From Lepidodermella squamata (taxonomy: Eukaryota > Animalia > Gastrotricha), in contig JBLDXI010000007.1 in the NCBI GenBank assembly GCA_047495785.1, positions 1,674,001-1,738,000 of the forward strand: a stretch of 64,000 nucleotides of DNA. The letters are read 5' to 3'. Below, one piece after another: positions 23,345 through 62,617 of this stretch. The position numbers and the translations under genes were made by a program. The notes beneath the pieces were generated by a model, which worked only from the letters and a program-made list of their open reading frames with translations, searched no databases and was not told where the DNA came from. Within the stretch, counting starts at the first letter, position 1, and every line of letters begins with the position of its first letter.

Positions 23345-24547
23345 TTAAGAGTCCGATGCAGAAATCTTGAAATTTCTGAAAACAGGTGATAAAAAGCGTT
23401 TGATATCATCAGTGAATCCGGGCTTCAAGCACTGAATAACCGGCGCAATCGCCATCTCGATCGTATACATCAGAAAACACATTTTGTGCGTAGTCGACGA
23501 CAAATAATTCGGTCCAAAGTCATTCCAAAGAATCGTCGCAATCATCGAAAACATGACAGGTACGTGGAACAGCGAAAAAGCTCCGAATGAAGCTAAAGAC
23601 TGGTACATGTAAAACATTTCTCGCTTCTGCCAATTCAAGAGAATTTTCTTCGATCTAACCGCTGCTGAGTTCGAACTCGATGGTATCGTCTGAGTTTGAT
23701 GTGATTTTCTTGAAGTTAACTGGTTCTTGAATGAGCGAAATTTATTGAACACCTTCCTGAAATTGAGAGAAAAACTTCACGAATAAAACCTGTAATTTTT
23801 AAAATCTTACCAATAGTTCATTGCAATGACGTTATTTGGAATAAAAATTGCGAATGTGATAAAATAAATAGCCAACAGTAAGGATGTGTCCAAGTTACCC
23901 GTCAACTTGTGATCGAATAAGCCGCATATTAAAACTGGTGTCCCATTATTAAACCAAGGGATTGATACGTAATCCGCAGCCAATGAATCAAACGGGTAAA
24001 TCGCAACGGTGAAAAATGCTACGAAACCGATGAGTAAGGATAGGAAAGCTAATATCAGGACTTTTCGGGTATTAGCCGGCGTGTTAGGGTTGTTTGAAAG
24101 GAGACAAAGTCGTCGTTCGTAGCTGATCAGCATGAAAATCCAGGTTGACTGTACACCGAGTGTTGACATTGATAGATAAAGCCCTTTGCACAGCCCAGCC
24201 GGGGCGTCCCAATACCCGGTTGGAACAGGTATCCACAGTGCAACAGCTATTCCTATAGCATGTATGATCGATACGGCAGCGAGAAATGCCGTTAAAACGA
24301 AGAAATCTCTGCGAACGTTTCTCCTGTAGTACACGACTAAATTGGCTACGTTGGTGCCGATGACTAAAATAGTTGCGATTAGGTAAACAATGGGGAAGGT
24401 GAGCCGCTCGGAAACAGTCTTTCCACTGACGTCGTGAAACCATCCGATAAAGTAGGGCCTAGGTTCGTTGTAGCCCCGCCGAGGGCTGGCCATTAATACC
24501 CATGCCTCGTTTATATACGCGCATTTTGAGTAGTCGGTGCTGTTCAT
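23345..24547 (-). CDS. Divergent class A 7TM receptor, copy 9, 2 exons
   Basis: Family motifs intact. Closest paralogue of copy 8. Confidence 0.85.
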
Positions 24548-25239: not shown

Positions 25240-25491
25240 AACGAATTTCGCCCAGGTTCGCCCAGGCCAAACGTGCTTCGACTAGGTTCGGCTAGCCAGT
25301 GCCAGAATGTTCGAACAGGCAAAAACAGCTTCGGCTAGGTTCGACCAAACTAAAAAAGCTGCGGCTAGGTTCGACCAAGCTATAAAAGCTTCGGCTAGGT
25401 TTGACCAAGCTAAAAAAGCTTCGGCTAGGTTCGACCAAGCTATAAAAGCTTCGGCTAGGTTTGACCAAGCTAAAAAAGCTTCGGCTAGGTT
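25240..25491. repeat. 30-bp minisatellite (about 8 units, consensus aaaaagcttcggctaggttcgaccaagcta)
   Basis: Direct tandem units, well conserved 25320-25491 and degenerate upstream. Confidence 0.9.
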
Positions 25492-26309
25492 ACGGATTCG
25501 AATATTTGAATATTATCCGGAATAGATAGCTCTGAGTATCCTCTTGCGAATGACGCCTAGAACTTGAAAAACTGCGAACAATATTTCAAATTATTCGGTG
25601 GCGTTTTCCCTTCGAAAATGTCCCACTTTTTGCAGGGCAGCAAATCACAGTGAAAAATTGGCAAATTAGCGATTTTCATGTCAGATTTTGCAAAATATTG
25701 CTATAAACATTCATTTGTCCTGAATTGGATCGCAGAGGTTCGACGCCCTGCGATAAATTGACTAACATTTCTGTTAAGGGTTTGAGATTTGAGGTCGAAA
25801 TATTGAGGATTGTGATTTATGATTTTTATTACATCACCCTAATTAAGTTCACTGTTAGCGTAACAATCGAACATCGCAACAATGACGACAACGCAATGAA
25901 CTGAAAATCTGCTCTTTGCTCCGTTTAATTTATCAAAATAGCAGTTTCATTACAACGTTCTTTTTCAAAACATTTGAGTTCGTTTTATCTCATTCAAATT
26001 ATTTCGAAAATTCTGCTTCATTAATGACTTTCGTGTTTGAATTTGTCAAAAACCAAGTGAAAAGATTTGGAGGCTATATCAAATCGACCCTTTCATTAAC
26101 CGCTTTTGTCGGCGTGGTTAGTTACCTCCAAGTTTTTTATCGACTCCGCAAGTTCTTTTCTAATCAATACCCCTTTGTTTGAGTTCCGAGATTTAGAAAT
26201 TTTTTGCATATTCCTGAATAACTGAGGCAATAATTTTTCATCATTATTTCAGGTAATTTTAAACTGGTTTTCTTTTGTTCAAAGATTTTTATTTGAATTG
26301 TTTACCAAC

Positions 26310-28329
26310 ATGGACACGATCAAGAACAAGGTGATTGAGAAAGCAACCGATGCCGTGACGGACAAGGCTAAGGAGAAGGTTCAGGAGAAGCTCGGCGACA
26401 AGAAAATCGAAGACCACGTTCCCGAATCGTTGAAATCATCCTACCAACATGTCAAGGCGATTGCAAAGGGCGAGGAAAGCATGATGCCGAACCTTGGCGA
26501 AAAGCTCGGCAGCATGGGCATTGGTTCAGGCGGGGGTGATAATGAACGGCCGCGGCTTGATCTGAAAACTTTCGGCTGGTCGATGCTGTTCGGAGGCGTT
26601 TCAGCAACCCTGGCTAAAACTCTGGTGGCACCTATTGAAATGATGAGCCCAACTCCGCATGAAACCAGCGTATCTACTCAGCAAGGTAAAACTCATTGGT
26701 AGCCCAAAAACATTATTTGGAAATGTGGAAATTTTCTCAATATGCATATGCAAATTAGCGTCGAAAATTATCGGATATATTTTAAAAATTGGGCGAAAAA
26801 TCAGGAAAATTTGGGGAAATTCACAAAATTTACAGGAAAATCTGGAACCACATTGCCCACCTTAATTCCAAATTTCAGATTTTAAGAGCAAAAGCTGATT
26901 TTTTTTCAAACTTGGGAGCTGTATTTTAAAAAATTCCAAATTTTAAGGCGGAATTTTAAAAAATATTTAAAATTTCACGTAATTTTGCTTTGAATTTTTT
27001 TTCAGGCTACATGACCTATTGGCGTGGCAATTTGTCGAATGTTGTGCGTGCTTTTCCGAACGAGGGTCTCAATTTCGCCCTTCGCGACTACTACAACGCA
27101 ATGTTGGGTCTGCGTGACATTGACGCCCGTCGTGAGCCATTCAAGTACTTTTGGACCAGCTATATGGGCGGCGGTGCTGCTGGTGTTGTCTCGCTAGCCG
27201 TTTTGTACCCGATCGATGCGGCTTATGGCTCACGTTTGCCGACTGATATCAGCAAAACGCTGACGCATGAACTTCACCTGAATGGAGGCCACGTCAAGGA
27301 CAGGTTCCCCAACAACAAAATCAGGATATTTGAATAAATTATATTACATTTAAAAAAATTTAAAAAAAATTAAAATCAAATTAAAAATGTTTCGAAGTTT
27401 TTCAAAAATAGTAACAAAAATTAAATTTGTAAAATGTGTCTTGAGCGGAATTTTCTCCAGATTCTTTACTCCAAGAAATTTATCAAGCTAATTAGTTTTT
27501 AGTTTTTTTAATTTTTAATGTTTTTTTAATTTTATGAGTTTTCTGAAATTCTTGAACAATTGAAATTCTTTAAATTTATTGAGATCGATTTTTCGGAATT
27601 CTTTGAAATTTTTGAATTTTTGATTATTTTGAATTTAGTATCAATTATGACATCGGTCGGATGAACAAAATCGACCCGGTTGAAGCTGGTCGCGATATGG
27701 TGAAGGCGGCTAAGAACGCTGGCAAGAACATGACTCAAACCGTCAAGGACACGGCCGGTCACATGGGCGAAAAAATGACCTACATGGGCGAGAAAGTGCG
27801 CGAGACGGCGCAAGAAGTCGGGTCAAAAGTTCGCGAAACCGCACAAGAAGTTGGGTCGAAAGTGCGCGAGGGTGAACTGCGCGGCGCCGCTCACAAGCTG
27901 TCCGAGGCCGCTGGCATACCGCAGCAGCCACCCGGCGGCGGCATGTTCGGCCTGTACCGCGGCTTTGTCCCATCTGTCATGGGCGCTTTCGTCTACCGAG
28001 CTGCTTATTTCGGCGCCTACGACACTGTTCGTGCGATGTACCCGGAAAAATCGTCGATCCTGTGGACGTGGCTCATTGCCCAGGCGACTACGACTGGCGC
28101 CAGCTATTTGTCTCACCCGTTTGATGTCATTCGTAACCGGATGATGTTTCACCGCGATGCTTATACTGGCACTATGAACTGTTGGGCTAAGACGTGGCAG
28201 CACGAGGGCATGTCGAGCCTGTACCGCGGCGCTTCGTCGAACATGGTCCGCAGCACTGGTGGCGCCTTGACCCTGGTGATCTACGACCAGATGAAGAATT
28301 ACGTGTCGAACAGCAAGAAAATGATTTAA
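26310..28329 (+). CDS. Mitochondrial carrier (SLC25), ADP/ATP translocase-like, with N-terminal extension and LEA-like loop insertion; 3 exons, about 454 aa
   Basis: Exons 26310-26685, 27006-27303 and 27639-28329 join in frame. ANT-like motifs GGVSATLAKTLVAPIE, YWRGNLSNVVRAFP..LNFA, GGAAG, LYRGF.PSV.G..VYRAAYFG.YDT, PFDVIRNRMM, YTGTMNCW, SNMVRSTGGALTLVIYD. The exon 2 donor (gttccc) is weak. Confidence 0.85.
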
Positions 28330-29714
28330 TCACAGGCAATCGATTTTCGGATGTGGATGACTGCATTTTTTTCATCAAATTTTTATCACTTCTTTTTTAA
28401 TATTGTACAAATGATTTTAGTTACGTGACGTAGAAATTTAGTATTACGGCCATTTCAACACAACGCTCAAATATTGCCAAAAAATATTTGTAAATACGAA
28501 ATTCATTTCACGAAATAAAATGGCTTTGTTTTACATCATGCCTTTGAAATATTATATGAATCGGGAAAATTCGTGCAAAACTTGATCGGCTTTGCAGAAC
28601 CTTTGTAACGCAAAAAACCATCGCAAGTTGCTGTCCAATATTTTTCAGTTTCATCAGTTTTTCGACTGGCATAGAATTCAAGGTAATTGGCGGTGATTGG
28701 GGCCATTTTTAGATTCCGGTAGGAATTGTTGTAGTAGCTTCGTTTCTACGCTTGTGGCCTGGCGATTTGTTTCGGCAACGGAACCGCACGATAGCCTGGT
28801 TCGGATTTTGAACGGTTAAAAAGCGACAAATAATATAAACCACTGATGTTCTCGAGATGCCCTACTGTAGCTCAGGAAAATTTTAAAAATATTGAAGAAG
28901 AATAGCTTTTGTTGAAAGTGTTGAATGTGCGCGATAGCTCGTTTTCCTCCTGATGATGATTTCCTTCTCTAGGTTTGCCTATAATGAATCATCAATATTC
29001 ACAATAGTTTAGACGCGTTTTATTTCCTGATGAGCTGTGGAATGATTTTATTAAGCTCGCAATTTTAGATGCATCCATCTAGTTCACTTGGACTGATTTC
29101 CGGCTCGAGGTAGTTATGAAATCGAAACTCGCACGCACTTTCGGACGTTATTTTTGAACATCACGACTGTATAGTTTGGGATGACCTTTGAGTTATTATA
29201 ATAAAGCAATGCGCACAACATGAATTTTGTGTCCCAGCGATAATTTGAGGCATAGGTATCTAATTTAAATTGTCTTCTCATTAAGTTTTAAGTTAAAGTA
29301 AAATATGAGTTTTATTGGCGAATCCTGGGTGAGCATCTCCAGCCCCAAACGTGGCTACGACGCGCCTCGTCCTTACTTTGTCGGTTGGTTCCACGACCTT
29401 CAAGCGAGGACGGTCGTCGAACGACTGCCATTCCCGATGGCCTATCTCATCGTCACAATCCTCGTCATTGCAACAAATGCCATCAACCTCGCGATTTATC
29501 GCAAACGGCAAGTTCGCAAAGACTTCTTTGTACTCACCTTACTCAGCGCTATTGTCTCGATCATCCACACATTGGCCCAAACTATCGCGATTTGGATACC
29601 GGTTTCGACAGGTTATTGGAACGCTCCGGCCTGGCTATGTGGCTTCATCTTCACTGTTTCAGCCAGTTCGGGCTGCCAGGGTACCTGGATTTTTATGCTT
29701 ATCAGCTACGAACG

Positions 29715-31249
29715 ATTCAGAGGTAGATCCGCACGGTATATTCGTACAGTGGAATTTTCCGCACGTATTATTTCCGCATAGAATAATGAGTGATGGGAAT
29801 TTTGCGCACGAGTTCAGATTAAATAAATCGCGGAATTTTCCGCATGAAAAGAAAAATCGCGGAAATTTCCGCATGGCGTTGGTGTTGCGTAATCGACAAA
29901 AAATTTGGAGCGGCAATTCCCGCACGCGACAAGCTTAACCCGTTGGTCACCGTATCATTCTTGTTAATTTCTCCCTTTTTATTTGATGAAATGGAGCTTA
30001 AGTGCGATATATGCAATGATGGAAAGACTTATGCTTCAGCTAGAGGTCTCGCTATTCACAAAGGTAAAGCGCATAAGCAACTACAACAGACGCCGGCGAG
30101 TCAACAATGTTAAGGCCTTCCCACAAACTCGTTTCTTTTTTTTCTCATGCGTATGCGAGTAAACACATACACATACAGCAAAAAGCATACAGCCCCCGTT
30201 CACAAACTGATTTCTTTTTTCCTTGTACGTGATTTTCTTCTGGCCGAAGAGGCCACTGAAAAAAGGGATGGCGGCACGTCGAATCGAACCCTCGACGACT
30301 TCGCACACATCGATAATTATATCGACATGGCTAAGCCGTCAAGCTTAATGTGTGACCTATAAATTAGGCTTTAAGGCAAAAAATTCATTGATGAAAACGT
30401 CAACAAACAAGTCGAAGATTAATGATTCATGCCCGCACTTGACCCAGAAAACGCGGATAGCTTTTATAGATATTAGCAACCAATAATTAGGCTTTTTATA
30501 GCGACAGATAAGTATGATGGCAACATAGTGCAGTTGCTATTGACCGGCCTGTTCAACGGGCGGACGGGGTTCGAGCCCCATCGAAGTTGGTCATTTTTTT
30601 CAGCGGCCTCTTCGGCCAGAAAAAAATCACATACAGGGAGAAAAGAAATCAGTTTGTGAACGGGTCTGTATGCGATTTTTTTTCGCCAACACATACGACC
30701 CCGGCAAAAAACTTAATACAAATCACATACACATTTTTTCATACGAGTTTGTGCGCAGACCTTAAGATCAGGCTATTATTTGATCTCGAGTCCCATTATA
30801 AATTCCACTTCTACAGCTATAGACGAGTCTTCCTCTTACACCGGCCGGTCATTTATCGCCTCCTCTTCAAATTTGTTACCCCCGGCACAGCCTGAAATGG
30901 AAAAGAAAAGAAGGAAAAGAAGCCGAAGCCTGAAACACTTATTCTCGATGAGGTCGATATTGACGCCACCAGCGCTTTTGCTGATATGAGGGACCGCTCA
31001 GATTGTGCTGATTAAAACTCGCATTTATTCTTTAATTTCTCGTGCGGAAAATTCCTCTCTAAAATAAAAGTTGTGCGGAAAATTCCACTCAAATTAATTT
31101 TGGGATTTCAATTTTGAATTTTGACTTCATGCGGAAAATTCCGCTCAATTTGAAAACTGATGCGGATAATTCCTATTTAAATCGTGCGGAAAGTTCCAGT
31201 CCAGATGCGGAAAATTCCACTAGCGCAATATACCTACGAACGTTTCACC
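29715..31249. mobile_element. Non-autonomous DNA transposon with 9-bp target duplication (Mutator-like, tentative)
   Basis: ctacgaacg at 29706-29714 and 31250-31258. Imperfect TIRs ggtatatt..agtggaattttccgca. Many subterminal gcggaa(a)attcc motifs. Internal C2H2 finger at 29991-30113. Confidence 0.75.
30114..30761. mobile_element. Nested TTAA-flanked MITE (GG..CC termini, Kolobok-like) with long internal inverted arms
   Basis: ttaa|ggccttcccacaaactcg ... cgagtttgtgcgcagacc|ttaa. About 30186-30265 is inverted relative to about 30594-30673. Confidence 0.75.
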
Positions 31250-32519
31250 CTACGAACGTAGGCTATGCCTGCTTTCCAACAGCCCAAACTCGCCGGCTAA
31301 TACGAAAAAGGTCCTGTTATTAGCGCTTGCTTCCCTAGTTCTAGGCGTTGTTACCTTTGGAACGCTAACAGTCTATCCGTTCAATGCACTGGCTGCTGAG
31401 TATGCGGCCGTTCCTGGGCTGAATAACGGTTCGGAGGCCTTGTACTGCGGAATGTTCGACTACAGCCTTGGTCCTCATATCGACACGTCCCTTCTTTCAA
31501 CAGTCTATTTCACAGTTTTAGCTGTCTTGATACCAAACACTTTGATCGCCCGAAACTACTGGTGAGAGTAATTTTATTTTTTGATCATCCCAACATTTAT
31601 TAATTAATTTTTTAAATTAATTCTAAAATTAATACAAACTATTTGAAAAAAAATCATAAATTTTAGTTAATTTCGAAATTAAATTGGAATATTTTGTTTT
31701 AGGATGATTTTTAGTAAGCTTCGATCGTTCAGCAAGTCCAGAAGAAGGGATAACACAGGCTCGATTTCCAGCAGTCAGCAATCGCTACCTGCGGTTTCAA
31801 ATAGCCTGTTGGCTAATTGGCAAAAGCGTGAAGTTTTCTACATGAAACAATCTTTACTGTCGTTTTTCGCATTTTCCCTATTTCATTTCCCCATTTTTGC
31901 ATCGCTGTTGCTTGTCGTGCTGTGGGACAGTGCTGGACCGGATCACCTGTCATCGACGCTGCATAAGCTGTGTCTGCTGACGTATACCCTCGAGACGGCA
32001 GTGGCGCCTGTTATACAGTGTTTGAGACCCGGATTCACGAACGACTTCAAGCGGTATTGGAGGGCTATTACTTGCAGGAAAAATCGCGACATAGCTCCAT
32101 TTCCTTGAAGACCTGGTCAACCATTTGTATTTTGAATCTAATTTCCATCCATAATTTGTAGATTTGATTTCATGTTTTTGATTTTGGGATCAGGATGTGA
32201 GAGGGAACGAAATTTGATTTTGATATTGATTTTAATAAAATCCCCAACACTGTTCGAGGGATGACGGTATGGAGTCGAGTTTCCTCTTCCAAATGGATGT
32301 AGCCTCGTGACAAAATTCCACGAACTGACGAAATGATGTGCAAAAAACTGTAGCCTAAATTTCTCGGAAACACCGTACTTGCAGCGTTTACTTTTGATCG
32401 ATACAGCCGGAATGACAGAGTTTCACGTTTCGCCCCTTTATAGATTTCACAAGACAGGATCTGCAATCTCTGCCAGAGCTATTTCCGCTGTTTCTTGTCA
32501 TGAGAGAGCTAAAACACTT

Positions 32520-60833: not shown

Positions 60834-62617
60834 TTATTCGACCTTTCTCTTCGCACAACACAGTCGGCGGAAAAAGCGAATAATCACGTAAAAGATGAGT
60901 ATTATAAAGGCAATCAAAGCAGCAAATAGGTCCAGATCGTAAAGCCGATAGAACGGAGCTGCGTCCTCGAACATTCGCAGGTGATCAGACCCAATCGTCA
61001 TTTCCATTTCAATAATATCAACCGCTCGTTTGAATTGTCGTGAGTTGTAGTACAAAGCTGCGCTAGCTTTCTGAAGGTTCGCCATCAGCGCAGGATTTTT
61101 CTCGATGTAGCGATGAATCAATGAATTCGACCTTTCGCAAAACGTTCTTTCCGAAGCCTCGCCATTTGCGTAGCTATCAATAACCTCGGCAATGCCCAGC
61201 TCTTTCGCTCGCATGCTCGTCAAGGGTTGTTCATTAACAATCGGATGGAGTAACATTGGTTTCCCAGCTAGAATTGCCTCCAATAATGTCTCTAAGCCAC
61301 CATGACTGACGAATAATTGAACAGCGGGATGATTGAGAACCTTCACATGGGCGACTCGCCTCTCAAGTCGTAAATTCTTGAATCCTCGCTGATTGTTATA
61401 AACATGCGGAGGAAGAGCCAAATCCAGCCTGGTATCGCCATGGGCCCATAAGATGTTGGTTTCAAACTCTTTGTTCCGCCTGCATAACAAGCCGCCGAAC
61501 AAATTTTGATAGGCCGAATACGTCGGGTTGACCAAAGTACCGAAGCCTATGTAAATGACAGGCTGGTTACGGGAATGGGCCTCGTCAAGCCATTTCAGGA
61601 GCCTAGAATCCATCTCCTGAGCATCAGGCTCGACAATCGGTCCTAAAACGTGGATGAAAGGCGATGCGTACCTTGCGTACTCGAAGCCCCAGTAATTATG
61701 GATGAAAATGTGTTTATTCCTGTACGGGGCTGTTTGGTCGAAACTATCCGGAATGCTGTAATTTGCTCGAATTTTCGACCTCTCAACCAGCCCAGGGTAC
61801 AGCCCATAAGCCATCTTAGCCGGATAGATGAACTTTGCGTAAAAGCGTTGTTGAAATGAAGCACCAAAAGGGCTGTAAGGTGCGATCGGAACTGGGATGA
61901 AGTTCTGAACCCCAGGTACGATTGGCAGGGACGATGAGAAGGCTGTTGCTACGTAAGGAATTTTTAGAACCGTAGCGACATCAGGACAGCTTTGAGAATT
62001 CCAGTCACAGACGATGAGATCAGGCCGATCGGCCTCACATAACTCTTTCAGGCTCCGGAAAGCTCCTTCGTAATTAATCTGAATGTTGTCGAAAAAGGTT
62101 CTAGATTGTCTCGAAATAGCTGGAAAGGTTGGCTGGTAATTTATTAATTTTTTCCTGATTTTTGTAAAATTTACCTTCATTTTGAGACGGAACTGTTTGA
62201 CTTGCATTAGCAGATCGCAATTTTAATTGCTCGCGAATTCTCTGCCGAACTGTTGGGTCCTCTGGGAATACGTATTCCTCGGTATACTTGAGCTGAACGA
62301 AGCTATTGAAATCGCCTGGTTTTATCCAGGCTTTAGCTGTTTCTGACAAAGCTGCATAGGTTGTTCGATGGCCGCGTTTTTGTAGTTCCCTTGATAGGAA
62401 TAGAATCGGCTTGACTTGGAACCTTGTGCAAACCTCGGTTGAGAATAGAATGTGCCCTTGTTTCGAGACAAGTTTCACGAGATCGGGTGACATATTCCCC
62501 TTGATTTCTTCCAGCTTTTCCGATAGATATCCGGGTTGTTCAGCCCGACTTTGATCATCTTCGGCAGCTGCTGAGAAAAATACCTGAGGCAAGAGGATGA
62601 CGAGAAATAACTGCATA
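60834..62617 (-). CDS. UDP-glycosyltransferase (GT1), membrane-anchored, 2 exons
   Basis: Signal peptide MQLFLVILL, ELQKRGH, RPDLIVCD, YIGFGT, HPAVQLFVSHGGLETLLEAILAGKPMLLHPIVNEQ, C-terminal TM and KRKVE. A 55-bp intron at 62174-62120 joins the two ORFs. Confidence 0.88.

What the first reader, a model, noticed from the sequence alone, without database searches (positions are those of the whole stretch)
26310..28329. ADP/ATP-carrier-like protein fused to LEA-like 11-mer repeats
Seen: the matrix loop of repeat 2 carries an insert of over 100 aa with 11-residue periodicity (AGRDMVKAAKN AGKNMTQTVKD TAGHMGEKMTY MGEKVRETAQE VGSKVRETAQE VGSKVRE). The two KVRETAQEVGS units differ at 6 nucleotides, all synonymous, which points to selection on the protein. 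An N-terminal extension of about 85 aa begins with similar character (KATDAVTDKAKEKVQEKLG). Known: 11-mer K/E/T/A amphipathic repeats typify group 3 LEA desiccation proteins, and ANTs are normally about 300 aa with short loops. Inference: an inner-membrane-anchored LEA-like protectant or a stress-regulated carrier. I do not know of this architecture being described.
Basis: partly seen in the sequence, partly recalled or inferred. Interest (0 to 1): 0.85.

Follow-up and report, generated by a model that had tools for sequence, protein, structure and literature searches.

The report
Divergent ADP/ATP carrier with amphipathic-repeat loop
An unidentified small invertebrate has an intact three-exon gene for a much-altered mitochondrial ADP/ATP carrier that carries a roughly 95-residue membrane-hugging helical repeat in one inward loop, a design found in no other sequenced organism, though whether it is expressed and what it does are untested.

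Summary
Window 26310-28329 (+) is a three-exon, in-frame GT-AG gene for a 454-aa protein.

- **Family:** its membrane part is clearly ADP/ATP-carrier-derived (bovine AAC1, 1okc, E 1.5e-34).
- **Insert:** matrix loop 2 is 122 aa instead of 27. It holds seven 11-mers that form a class-A amphipathic 11/3 helix (moment z = 5.1).
- **Selection:** two 33-nt units differ at six sites, all synonymous (P about 7.5e-5).
- **Coding status:** the insert is exon-like in composition, continuous with the carrier exon, and cannot be skipped in frame by an alternative acceptor.

Matrix helix h12 is deleted, two of three matrix-gate salt bridges are lost, RRRMMM has become RNRMMF, and 57 of 141 ANT-invariant positions are changed.

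The insert is not a Pfam LEA_4 member and has no homologues. No protein with this architecture turned up among 1.84 billion representatives.

My best reading (0.4) is a carrier scaffold reused as an inner-membrane anchor for a lipid-surface-binding helix.

The scan noted the same architecture on another piece of this genome (s1-401988, unchecked).

The parts
26310..26685 (+). Exon 1: start codon, N-terminal extension (about 78-80 aa, 26310-26549) and transmembrane helix H1 with a degenerate signature (PIEMMS instead of PIERVK).
26686..27005 (+). Intron 1 (320 nt, 28% GC, GT...TTTTTTCAG). It sits exactly where 20 residues (matrix loop 1 and helix h12) are missing, and no ANT-like remnant lies inside it.
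27006..27303 (+). Exon 2: H2, H3 (PIDAAY instead of PLDFAR) and the start of matrix loop 2.
27304..27638 (+). Intron 2 (335 nt, about 21% GC).
27639..28329 (+). Exon 3: the insert, h34-like segment, H4, H5 (RNRMMF at 28132-28149), h56, H6 and the stop codon.
27685..27915 (+). Core of the insert: seven 11-residue units (protein 241-317) forming a class-A amphipathic 11/3 helix. AF2 predicts one 65-residue helix (protein 238-302).
27793..27870 (+). Youngest repeats: two full 33-nt units (27793-27825, 27826-27858) plus a 12-nt third. The full units encode the identical peptide KVRETAQEVGS with 6 silent differences.
27940..28326 (+). C-terminal carrier half (H4-H6), 46-50% identical to the ANTs compared by tblastn. 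It retains G182, Y186, R187, S227, R234, R236, N276 and R279 equivalents.

Best explanation
This is a lineage-restricted paralogue of the mitochondrial ADP/ATP carrier that has taken on a new function. I propose that the six-helix carrier bundle now serves mainly as a membrane anchor, perhaps still binding nucleotide, and that two hydrophilic appendages do the new work.

Proposed topology (by homology with AAC structures):
- The bundle sits in the inner membrane with both termini in the intermembrane space.
- The roughly 80-aa K/E/G-rich N-terminal extension therefore faces the intermembrane space.
- The 122-aa loop 2 faces the matrix.

Proposed action: the 7 x 11-mer core of loop 2 folds into one long amphipathic 11/3 helix with a narrow Ala/Val/Met/Gly stripe, Lys/Arg at the stripe's edges and Glu in the centre of the polar face. 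Such a helix would lie flat on the matrix leaflet of the cardiolipin-rich inner membrane. This is how exchangeable apolipoproteins, alpha-synuclein and mitochondrial group-3 LEA proteins behave on lipid surfaces. It would stabilise or shape the membrane, possibly under water or osmotic stress.

Canonical alternating-access ADP/ATP exchange is probably impaired. Repeat 1 has lost h12 and the end of H1, two of three matrix-gate salt bridges are gone, and the central arginine of RRRMMM is Asn.

Shown here: gene structure, ANT ancestry, position and periodicity of the insert, amphipathic pattern, silent-only divergence of repeats, loss of gate residues, absence of relatives.

Inferred: expression, inner-membrane location and topology, lipid binding, loss of transport, any stress role.
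For: - Intact 454-codon ORF across three exons with canonical, phase-compatible splice sites.
- Exons are 52-56% GC against 21-28% in introns. The insert is 59% GC with GC3 0.67, like the carrier exons.
- No in-phase AG acceptor lies between 27642 and 28000, and there is no GTRAG donor inside the insert, so it cannot be skipped in frame that way.
- ANT ancestry is supported.
- The insert maps between H3 and the h34-like segment.
- Lag-11 identity is 0.33 and the moment peak is at 98.2 degrees with z = 5.1.
- Wheel pattern: apolar positions 1, 5, 9, 2; Lys/Arg at positions 4 and 6; Glu at positions 7 and 11.
- AF2 gives a single helix over residues 13-77 of exon 3 with pLDDT 66-79.
- Six silent and no replacement differences between units, P about 7.5e-5, pS 0.72.
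- Both appendages are hydrophilic (GRAVY -0.85 and -0.89), 11-13% Gly, with no Trp, Cys or Phe.
- The N-terminus is rich in acidic residues, so it does not look like a presequence (my reading of the sequence).
- Degeneration of the carrier: a 20-aa deletion of h12, K32S, Q36H, R137Y, R235N, K95N, I183A, M239F. 57 of 141 ANT-invariant columns are changed. The terminal branch is 4.9 against a median of 0.22.
- Sub-threshold Pfam similarity points to lipid-surface helical families: ApoLp-III 9.3e-5, YtxH 5.4e-4, Apolipoprotein 1.4e-3.
Against:
- No orthologue is available to measure selection on the whole gene.
- Most central substrate-contact residues are kept (K22, R79, N87, G182, Y186, R187, S227, R234, R236, N276, R279). 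That fits a protein that still binds or even transports nucleotides.
- The apolar stripe is weak (Ala/Gly/Val/Met), so lipid binding is not assured.
- A 122-aa hydrophilic matrix loop would have to cross the inner membrane during carrier-type import, which is unusual.
- AF2 confidence in the insert is only moderate and rests on no alignment depth.
- The organism is unidentified, so no ecological link to drying exists.
Confidence: 0.4

Rival explanations
1. It is a working, if unusual, nucleotide carrier. The protein still exchanges or conducts adenine nucleotides (or protons, or another solute), and the long loop and N-terminal extension regulate or tether it, as the EF-hand domains do in Aralar/citrin and SCaMC carriers.
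For: - Eleven of the central binding-site residues are conserved.
- TM helices H4 and H6 keep 81-91% of ANT-invariant positions.
- Two of three cytoplasmic-gate pairs are intact.
- The carrier half models confidently on AAC structures.
Against: - R235N lies in the RRRMMM signature. All three arginines are reported essential in yeast AAC2 (my recollection of Nelson et al. 1993, not checked here).
- K32S and R137Y remove two matrix salt bridges.
- h12 and the C-terminal end of H1 are replaced by a Pro-rich stretch (MMSPTPHE).
- The branch is very long and the composition shifted.
Confidence: 0.2
2. It is a decaying duplicate. A redundant ANT copy drifts under relaxed constraint, and the loop insert is a tolerated minisatellite-like expansion with no function.
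For: - Many ANT-invariant residues are lost, h12 is deleted, and the branch is very long.
- The insert grew by tandem duplication of a 33-nt unit.
- No orthologue was found anywhere.
Against: - The ORF is open over 454 codons and three exons with intact splice sites.
- The repeat units have diverged only silently, to near saturation.
- The CDS has the highest GC3 (0.65) of all long ORFs in the window, which range 0.40-0.56.
- Binding-site residues and TM helices are retained.
Confidence: 0.15
3. It is a carrier relocated to another membrane. Like MTCH2 or SLC25A46 (outer membrane) or peroxisomal carriers, the degenerate carrier sits elsewhere, and the 11-mer helix faces the cytosol. There it could bind lipid droplets or other organelle surfaces in the manner of perilipin.
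For: - Gate motifs are lost and the appendages are unusual.
- A long hydrophilic loop is easier to accommodate if it need not cross the inner membrane (inference).
- 11-mer amphipathic repeats are the lipid-droplet-targeting device of perilipins (my own knowledge).
Against: - The closest relatives by far are inner-membrane AACs.
- The cardiolipin-type [YWF][KR]G motifs of H2, H4 and H6 are kept as WRG, YRG and YRG.
- Nothing in the sequence points to another compartment.
Confidence: 0.1
4. The gene model is wrong. The mature mRNA differs from my model through further exons, another 5' end or a non-canonical splice, so that the insert or the h12 deletion is not in the real protein.
For: - There is no RNA evidence.
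- Both novelties abut introns.
- A possible upstream acceptor (ttatttcag|) lies at 26252.
Against: - The insert has exon composition and runs on without a break into H4.
- No in-phase acceptor or good internal donor exists.
- tblastn with five ANTs finds no h12-coding remnant in intron 1 or nearby.
- Silent-only divergence shows the repeat is translated in this frame.
Confidence: 0.1

Closest known systems
Mitochondrial ADP/ATP carrier (AAC/ANT, SLC25A4-6; structures 1okc, 4c9g, 6gci)
   Same: It shares the three-repeat, six-helix Mito_carr fold. AACs are the best sequence and structure matches. K22, R79, G182, Y186, R187, R234, R236 and R279 equivalents are retained, along with [YW]RG motifs and two cytoplasmic-gate pairs.
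   Different: - 454 aa instead of about 300.
- A roughly 80-aa N-terminal extension.
- Loop 2 of 122 aa instead of 27.
- h12 deleted.
- RRRMMM is RNRMMF.
- K32, Q36, R137 and K95 are lost.
- 40% of ANT-invariant positions are changed.
Mitochondrial group-3 LEA proteins (pea LEAM, Artemia AfrLEA3m, tardigrade RvLEAM). Named from my own knowledge; PMC3353982 surfaced in the LEAM search but was not read.
   Same: Hydrophilic, Gly-containing and 11-mer-periodic. The class-A amphipathic helix has basic residues at the interface and acidic residues on the polar face, and is expected to lie on the matrix face of the inner membrane.
   Different: There is no LEA_4 HMM match and no detectable homology. 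LEAM-type proteins are soluble matrix proteins imported by a presequence. Here the helix is covalently built into a loop of an integral membrane protein.
Exchangeable apolipoproteins (ApoLp-III, ApoA/E), alpha-synuclein and perilipin 11-mer repeats
   Same: An 11/3 amphipathic helix with a weakly hydrophobic stripe. Nominal Pfam similarity to ApoLp-III is E 9.3e-5 at 23 bits, and to Apolipoprotein 1.4e-3. ApoE and alpha-synuclein appear among the non-significant PDB sequence hits.
   Different: All scores are below the curated cut-offs (36.3 and 90 bits). The likeness is one of repeat class, not ancestry. Those proteins are soluble and bind lipid reversibly.
Carriers with appended domains or new structural roles: Aralar/citrin and SCaMC (N-terminal EF-hands), MTCH2 and SLC25A46 (degenerate outer-membrane carriers), and carrier-fold subunits of Tetrahymena complex IV (7w5z M1-M3)
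   Same: These show that the SLC25 scaffold can carry extra domains, lose its transport motifs and be reused structurally. 7w5z and 8b6h carrier subunits appear among the structural matches.
   Different: Known appendages are terminal, not inside a matrix loop, and none is an 11-mer amphipathic repeat. Statements about Aralar, SCaMC, MTCH2 and SLC25A46 come from my own knowledge.
Bacterial YtxH-like general stress proteins (PF12732)
   Same: The concept is the same: a membrane anchor followed by LEA/apolipoprotein-like amphipathic helix. The hit is weak (E 5.4e-4, 20.8 bits).
   Different: The score is below the cut-off of 37.5 bits. YtxH has a single-helix anchor, is bacterial and is unrelated in ancestry.

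Membership tests
SLC25 / Mito_carr (PF00153) | Pfam Mito_carr repeats above the gathering score | tested here: met
   Exon 2 scores 35.7 bits and exon 3 scores 92.2 bits (two stretches each), against a cut-off of 22.3.
SLC25 / Mito_carr (PF00153) | PX[DE]XX[KR] signature on H1, H3 and H5 (matrix salt-bridge network) | tested here: not met
   H1 reads PIEMMS (K32 to S), H3 reads PIDAAY (R137 to Y), and only H5 (PFDVIR) is intact.
SLC25 / Mito_carr (PF00153) | Three matrix helices (h12, h34, h56) | tested here: not met
   h12 and its YKG motif are deleted, leaving 20 residues between PIE and WRGN instead of 40. There is no remnant in intron 1. An h34-like segment and h56 are present.
ADP/ATP carrier (AAC/ANT) | Closest solved and database relatives are AACs rather than other carriers | tested here: met
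   1okc scores E 1.5e-34 against UCP1 at 1.5e-12. Foldseek's top ten are all AACs. Named hits are ANTs.
ADP/ATP carrier (AAC/ANT) | RRRMMM signature on H5 | tested here: not met
   It reads RNRMMF at protein 390-395 (28132-28149). R235 and M239 are invariant in the nine reference ANTs.
ADP/ATP carrier (AAC/ANT) | Substrate-site residues K22, R79, G182/I183, Y186, R187, R279 (bovine numbering, from my own knowledge) | tested here: met
   All are conserved except I183, which is Ala.
ADP/ATP carrier (AAC/ANT) | ADP/ATP exchange, and inhibition by carboxyatractyloside or bongkrekate | not testable with these tools
   This needs reconstitution or yeast complementation.
LEA group 3 (Pfam LEA_4, PF02987) | Match to the LEA_4 profile | tested here: not met
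   LEA_4 is absent from the hmmscan lists at E<=1 and at E<=10 on the insert alone. HMMER filters may hide very weak matches.
LEA group 3 (Pfam LEA_4, PF02987) | Tandem 11-mer repeats forming an amphipathic class-A helix | tested here: met
   Lag-11 identity is 0.33, the moment peaks at 98.2 degrees with z = 5.1, and the wheel pattern fits.
LEA group 3 (Pfam LEA_4, PF02987) | High hydrophilicity, Gly-rich, lacking Trp and Cys | tested here: met
   GRAVY is -0.85, Gly is 13%, and there is no Trp, Cys or Phe in the core. It is less hydrophilic than typical LEA3 proteins (my own knowledge).
LEA group 3 (Pfam LEA_4, PF02987) | Induction by water loss, and a coil-to-helix change on drying | not testable with these tools
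   There is no expression data. This needs CD or FTIR on the peptide.
Exchangeable apolipoprotein (ApoLp-III PF07464, Apolipoprotein PF01442) | Profile match above the curated cut-off | tested here: not met
   ApoLp-III scores 23.0 bits against 36.3, and Apolipoprotein 18.8 bits against 90.

The most novel reading that the evidence does not exclude
A previously unseen way of protecting or shaping the mitochondrial inner membrane. A retired ADP/ATP carrier is kept as a permanent anchor that presents a LEA/apolipoprotein-like amphipathic helix to the matrix leaflet and a second hydrophilic arm to the intermembrane space. The gene exists in at least two copies in one invertebrate lineage, was built de novo by 33-nt tandem duplication at an exon edge, and is possibly tied to tolerance of drying or osmotic stress.
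Probability: 0.3. Interest if true: 0.75.

Novelty: new variant of a known kind. Interest (0 to 1): 0.55.

Why it matters
Mitochondrial carriers are among the most uniform membrane proteins known, at about 300 aa with short loops. The extra domains described so far are terminal.

A carrier with a selected, roughly 95-aa amphipathic repeat inside a matrix loop, combined with loss of h12 and of gate residues, would be new in three ways:
- It would be a natural example of the SLC25 scaffold being reused as an anchor.
- It would be a test case for how the carrier import route handles a large hydrophilic loop.
- If lipid binding is confirmed, it would be a membrane-tethered counterpart of soluble mitochondrial LEA proteins.

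It also shows a new protein segment arising by tandem duplication at an exon boundary and then coming under strong peptide-level constraint.

The value is limited for now. There is one gene (an earlier, unchecked note reports a second copy), the animal is unidentified, and there are no expression data.

Tried and rejected
- The Rfam scans and local BLAST databases were split around those places.
- **Orthologues or self in protein collections:**
  - The word-indexed search with exon 3 found only canonical ANTs covering 49-69% of the query.
  - Exhaustive phmmer over 1.84 billion representatives found no protein with the insert. The top hit, P0061, is a vertebrate ANT with a duplicated C-terminus.
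  - Exact look-ups of the exon-3 ORF and of a neighbouring 448-aa ORF found nothing on record.
- **Full-length spliced protein:** it has no reference form and I did not type it. So the search window of 0.55-1.75 times a 454-aa query, and an exact look-up of a spliced transcript product, were left out.
- **Homologues of the insert alone:** none in the word-indexed search, none in JGI metagenome contigs, no usable ESM Atlas hit, and only non-significant PDB hits.
- **P0096:** this lipase with about 25 copies of VGNKVRNTARN shares the VG.KVR.TA skeleton. It lies on a metagenome contig beside WD40, RING, Fic and SWIB genes, so I take it as unrelated and convergent.
- **LEA_4 membership:** rejected.
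- **Hidden exon for h12 in intron 1:** rejected.
- **In-frame skipping of the insert:** I found no in-phase acceptor and no good internal donor.
- **Second copy within the window:** none.
- **Organism identity:**
  - Rfam gave nothing.
  - The UDPGT ORF had no homologues by the word search.
  - The nearest ESM Atlas cluster of a Cys-loop ORF is mostly nematode.
  - The ANT tree leaves the protein unplaced on a very long branch.
- **Literature:** no paper describing an ANT with an LEA-like insert was found.
- **Bacterial promoter/terminator scan:** irrelevant here.
- **First MAFFT alignment (A1):** it misaligned the insert against the N-terminal half of the ANTs, so I discarded it in favour of A2.
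Full report
**What is there**

Window 26310-28329 (+) reads as a three-exon gene: 26310-26685, 27006-27303 and 27639-28329.
- The donors are AAG|GTAAAA and CAG|GTTCCC. The acceptors are TTTTTTCAG|G and GAATTTAG|T.
- The phases fit: one base plus two, then two bases plus one. The spliced CDS is 1365 nt, or 454 codons (about 50 kDa).
- Exons are 52-56% GC, while introns are 28% and about 21%.
- The CDS has the highest GC3 (0.65) of all long ORFs in the window, which range 0.40-0.56.
- AATAAA lies about 185 nt after the stop, and a possible upstream acceptor (ttatttcag|) lies at 26252.

**Family**

- Pfam Mito_carr hits exon 2 (7.4e-9) and exon 3 (1.7e-26).
- The nearest proteins are ADP/ATP carriers of arthropods, nematodes and unnamed eukaryotic transcripts. 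They reach about 48% identity, but only over the carrier part.
- Against solved structures, bovine AAC1 (1okc) scores E 1.5e-34, yeast AAC2/3 about 1e-29 and UCP1 only 1.5e-12.
- An AF2 model of exon 3 (mean pLDDT 76.9; the carrier half, from H4 on, mostly 82-93) matches AAC structures first.
- So the protein descends from an ANT.

**Anatomy against nine ANTs**

1. **N-terminal extension.** About 78-80 aa precede H1.
2. **Repeat 1.** It has 20 residues between PIE and WRGN where ANTs have 40.
   - The matrix loop, helix h12 and its YKG motif are gone.
   - RVKLLLQVQ is replaced by the proline-rich MMSPTPHE.
   - tblastn with five ANTs finds no remnant in intron 1.
   - The gap falls exactly on the exon 1/2 junction.
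3. **Matrix loop 2.** It is 122 aa (207-328) instead of 27.
   - The new material lies between H3 and an h34-like segment (REGELRGAAHKLSEAAG aligns with REFxGLxDCLxKxxKSDG).
   - It begins at the exon 2/3 junction.
4. **Loop 3.** It is 6 aa shorter.
5. **Central residues kept** (bovine numbering): K22, R79, N87, G182, Y186, R187, S227, R234, R236, N276, R279.
6. **Residues invariant in the references but lost:**
   - K32S, Q36H and R137Y. These remove two of the three matrix salt bridges and the Gln brace.
   - R235N and M239F, so RRRMMM becomes RNRMMF.
   - K95N, which removes one cytoplasmic-gate pair.
   - I183A.
7. **Overall divergence.** 57 of 141 reference-invariant columns are changed or deleted. 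In a maximum-likelihood tree, the carrier-only sequence sits on a terminal branch of 4.9 against a median of 0.22, and its position is unresolved.

The roles I assign to these residues come from my knowledge of the AAC literature, not from a test here.

**The insert**

In register from residue 241 there are seven 11-mers:

| Unit | Sequence |
|---|---|
| 1 | AGRDMVKAAKN |
| 2 | AGKNMTQTVKD |
| 3 | TAGHMGEKMTY |
| 4 | MGEKVRETAQE |
| 5 | VGSKVRETAQE |
| 6 | VGSKVREGELR |
| 7 | GAAHKLSEAAG |

- Lag-11 identity is 0.33 against a background of about 0.05.
- The hydrophobic moment over all 77 residues is maximal exactly at 98.2 degrees, the angle of an 11/3 helix. It has z = 5.1, and 0 of 2000 shuffles reach it.
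- On the wheel, positions 1, 5, 9 and 2 form a narrow Ala/Val/Met/Gly stripe. Lys and Arg sit at its edges (positions 4 and 6), and Glu fills the centre of the polar face (positions 7 and 11). This is the class-A pattern of apolipoproteins and of mitochondrial LEA proteins (my own knowledge).
- AF2 predicts one uninterrupted 65-residue helix (protein 238-302, pLDDT 66-79), but with no alignment depth there.
- The loop is hydrophilic (GRAVY -0.74; core -0.85), 13% Gly, and its core has no Trp, Cys or Phe.

**Is the insert coding and selected?**

- It is continuous with H4 in one exon and has exon-like composition (59% GC, GC3 0.67).
- No AG in the right phase exists between 27642 and 28000, and there is no GTRAG donor inside it. 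It therefore cannot be skipped in frame by an alternative acceptor.
- TRF reports a 33-nt period at 27793-27870.
- The two full units encode the same 11 residues but differ at six third positions. There are 8.3 synonymous sites, pS is 0.72 (near saturation), and there are no replacement changes.
- In simulation, six random changes are all silent with P about 7.5e-5.
- This is good evidence that the segment is translated in this frame and that the peptide has been held constant for a long time.

**The N-terminal extension**

- It is K/E/G-rich, hydrophilic (GRAVY -0.89) and contains many acidic residues, so it does not look like a presequence.
- It has no significant 11-mer periodicity.
- It has only non-significant Pfam likeness to HSP9/HSP12 and MT0933-like proteins (E 0.1-0.2).
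- The single-sequence AF2 model is of low confidence (pLDDT 55).

**Is it an LEA protein?**

- By the family's profile it is not. LEA_4 does not appear at E<=1 or at E<=10.
- The best hits are ApoLp-III (9.3e-5, 23 bits), DUF6781, YtxH and Apolipoprotein. All are under their curated cut-offs.
- The insert has no homologues in the word-indexed collection, in JGI metagenome contigs or in the ESM Atlas. PDB hits to ApoE and alpha-synuclein are not significant.
- It belongs to the physical class of 11/3 amphipathic repeats, and it evidently arose locally by tandem duplication.
- A striking look-alike repeat, VGNKVRNTARN x ~25, is attached to a lipase (P0096). It lies on an unrelated metagenome contig, and I take it as convergent.

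**Distribution**

- Exhaustive phmmer of exon 3 against 1.84 billion representatives found 5509 carriers but none with the insert.
- Structural searches found only plain carriers.
- No paper describing such an architecture was found.
- An earlier first-stage note (s1-401988) reports the same architecture on another piece of this genome. I could not fetch it, so it may be a paralogue or the other haplotype.
- Part of the stretch (26% of the sampled words) is held by a 2015 run of a differently labelled organism. I could not examine it.

**The organism**

- It is an animal: the window holds Cys-loop receptor, UDPGT and 7TM genes.
- The acceptors are TTTCAG-type.
- Earlier notes mention SL trans-splicing operons and 'probable nematode'.
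- The nearest ESM Atlas cluster of a Cys-loop ORF is mostly nematode.
- It remains unidentified, so no link to an anhydrobiotic way of life can be claimed.

**How it most likely works**

By homology with AAC structures, both termini face the intermembrane space and the odd loops face the matrix. The N-extension would therefore sit in the intermembrane space and the long helix in the matrix.

The helix's weak apolar stripe flanked by Lys and Arg suits shallow, reversible binding to an acidic, cardiolipin-rich leaflet.

The carrier core has lost h12, two matrix-gate bridges and the central Arg of RRRMMM. Normal alternating-access exchange is therefore doubtful. The binding pocket is preserved, which leaves room for nucleotide binding or a leak.

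I therefore favour (0.4) a carrier scaffold reused as an anchor for a membrane-surface helix. The rivals are:
- a still-working regulated carrier (0.2);
- a decaying duplicate (0.15);
- relocation to another membrane (0.1);
- a wrong gene model (0.1).

**What could not be done**

I worked beside those places and sent none of their letters to any search tool afterwards.
- The 454-aa spliced protein has no reference form, so I did not search with it.

**Verdict**

The 'LEA-like' reading holds as a way of working but not as family membership. I class it as a new variant of a known kind, of moderate interest until expression and conservation are shown.

Noticed in passing
window 23345-24547 (-) and 29305-32108 (+): The carrier gene lies between two paralogous GPCR-like genes that point away from each other. 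They share the N-terminal motif SP(K/R)RGY.(A/E)PRPYF.GWFHD and the C-terminal NWQKRE.FYM.QSL, and there is a weak 7tm_1 hit.
   Followed up: no
window 25309-25491: A 30-bp minisatellite of 6.1 copies at 90% identity also reads as an ORF of SARFDQAKKA-like 10-mers. It is probably non-coding.
   Followed up: no
L001:3001-4737 (P0096, JGI metagenome contig of 30.9 kb): A Lipase_3 protein has a tail of about 25 copies of the 11-mer VGNKVRNTARN, the same VG.KVR.TA skeleton as the insert's VGSKVRETAQE. Its neighbours (WD40, RING, Fic, SWIB) suggest a protist or giant virus. I take the likeness as convergent.
   Followed up: partly
window 26685/27006 and 27303/27639: Both structural novelties sit at exon edges. 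The h12 deletion is exactly at the exon 1/2 junction, and the insert starts at the exon 2/3 junction. This suggests splice-site sliding or exonisation followed by 33-nt duplication.
   Followed up: partly
window 26310-28329: The CDS has the highest GC (0.54) and GC3 (0.65) of 19 long ORFs compared in the window, where the others have GC3 of 0.40-0.56. This may be a codon-bias hint of high expression.
   Followed up: no
window 60834-62204 (-): A 456-aa single-exon UDP-glycosyltransferase-like ORF (Pfam UDPGT 1.9e-13) found no homologue at E<=0.001 in the word-indexed protein collection. This points to a poorly sampled lineage.
   Followed up: no
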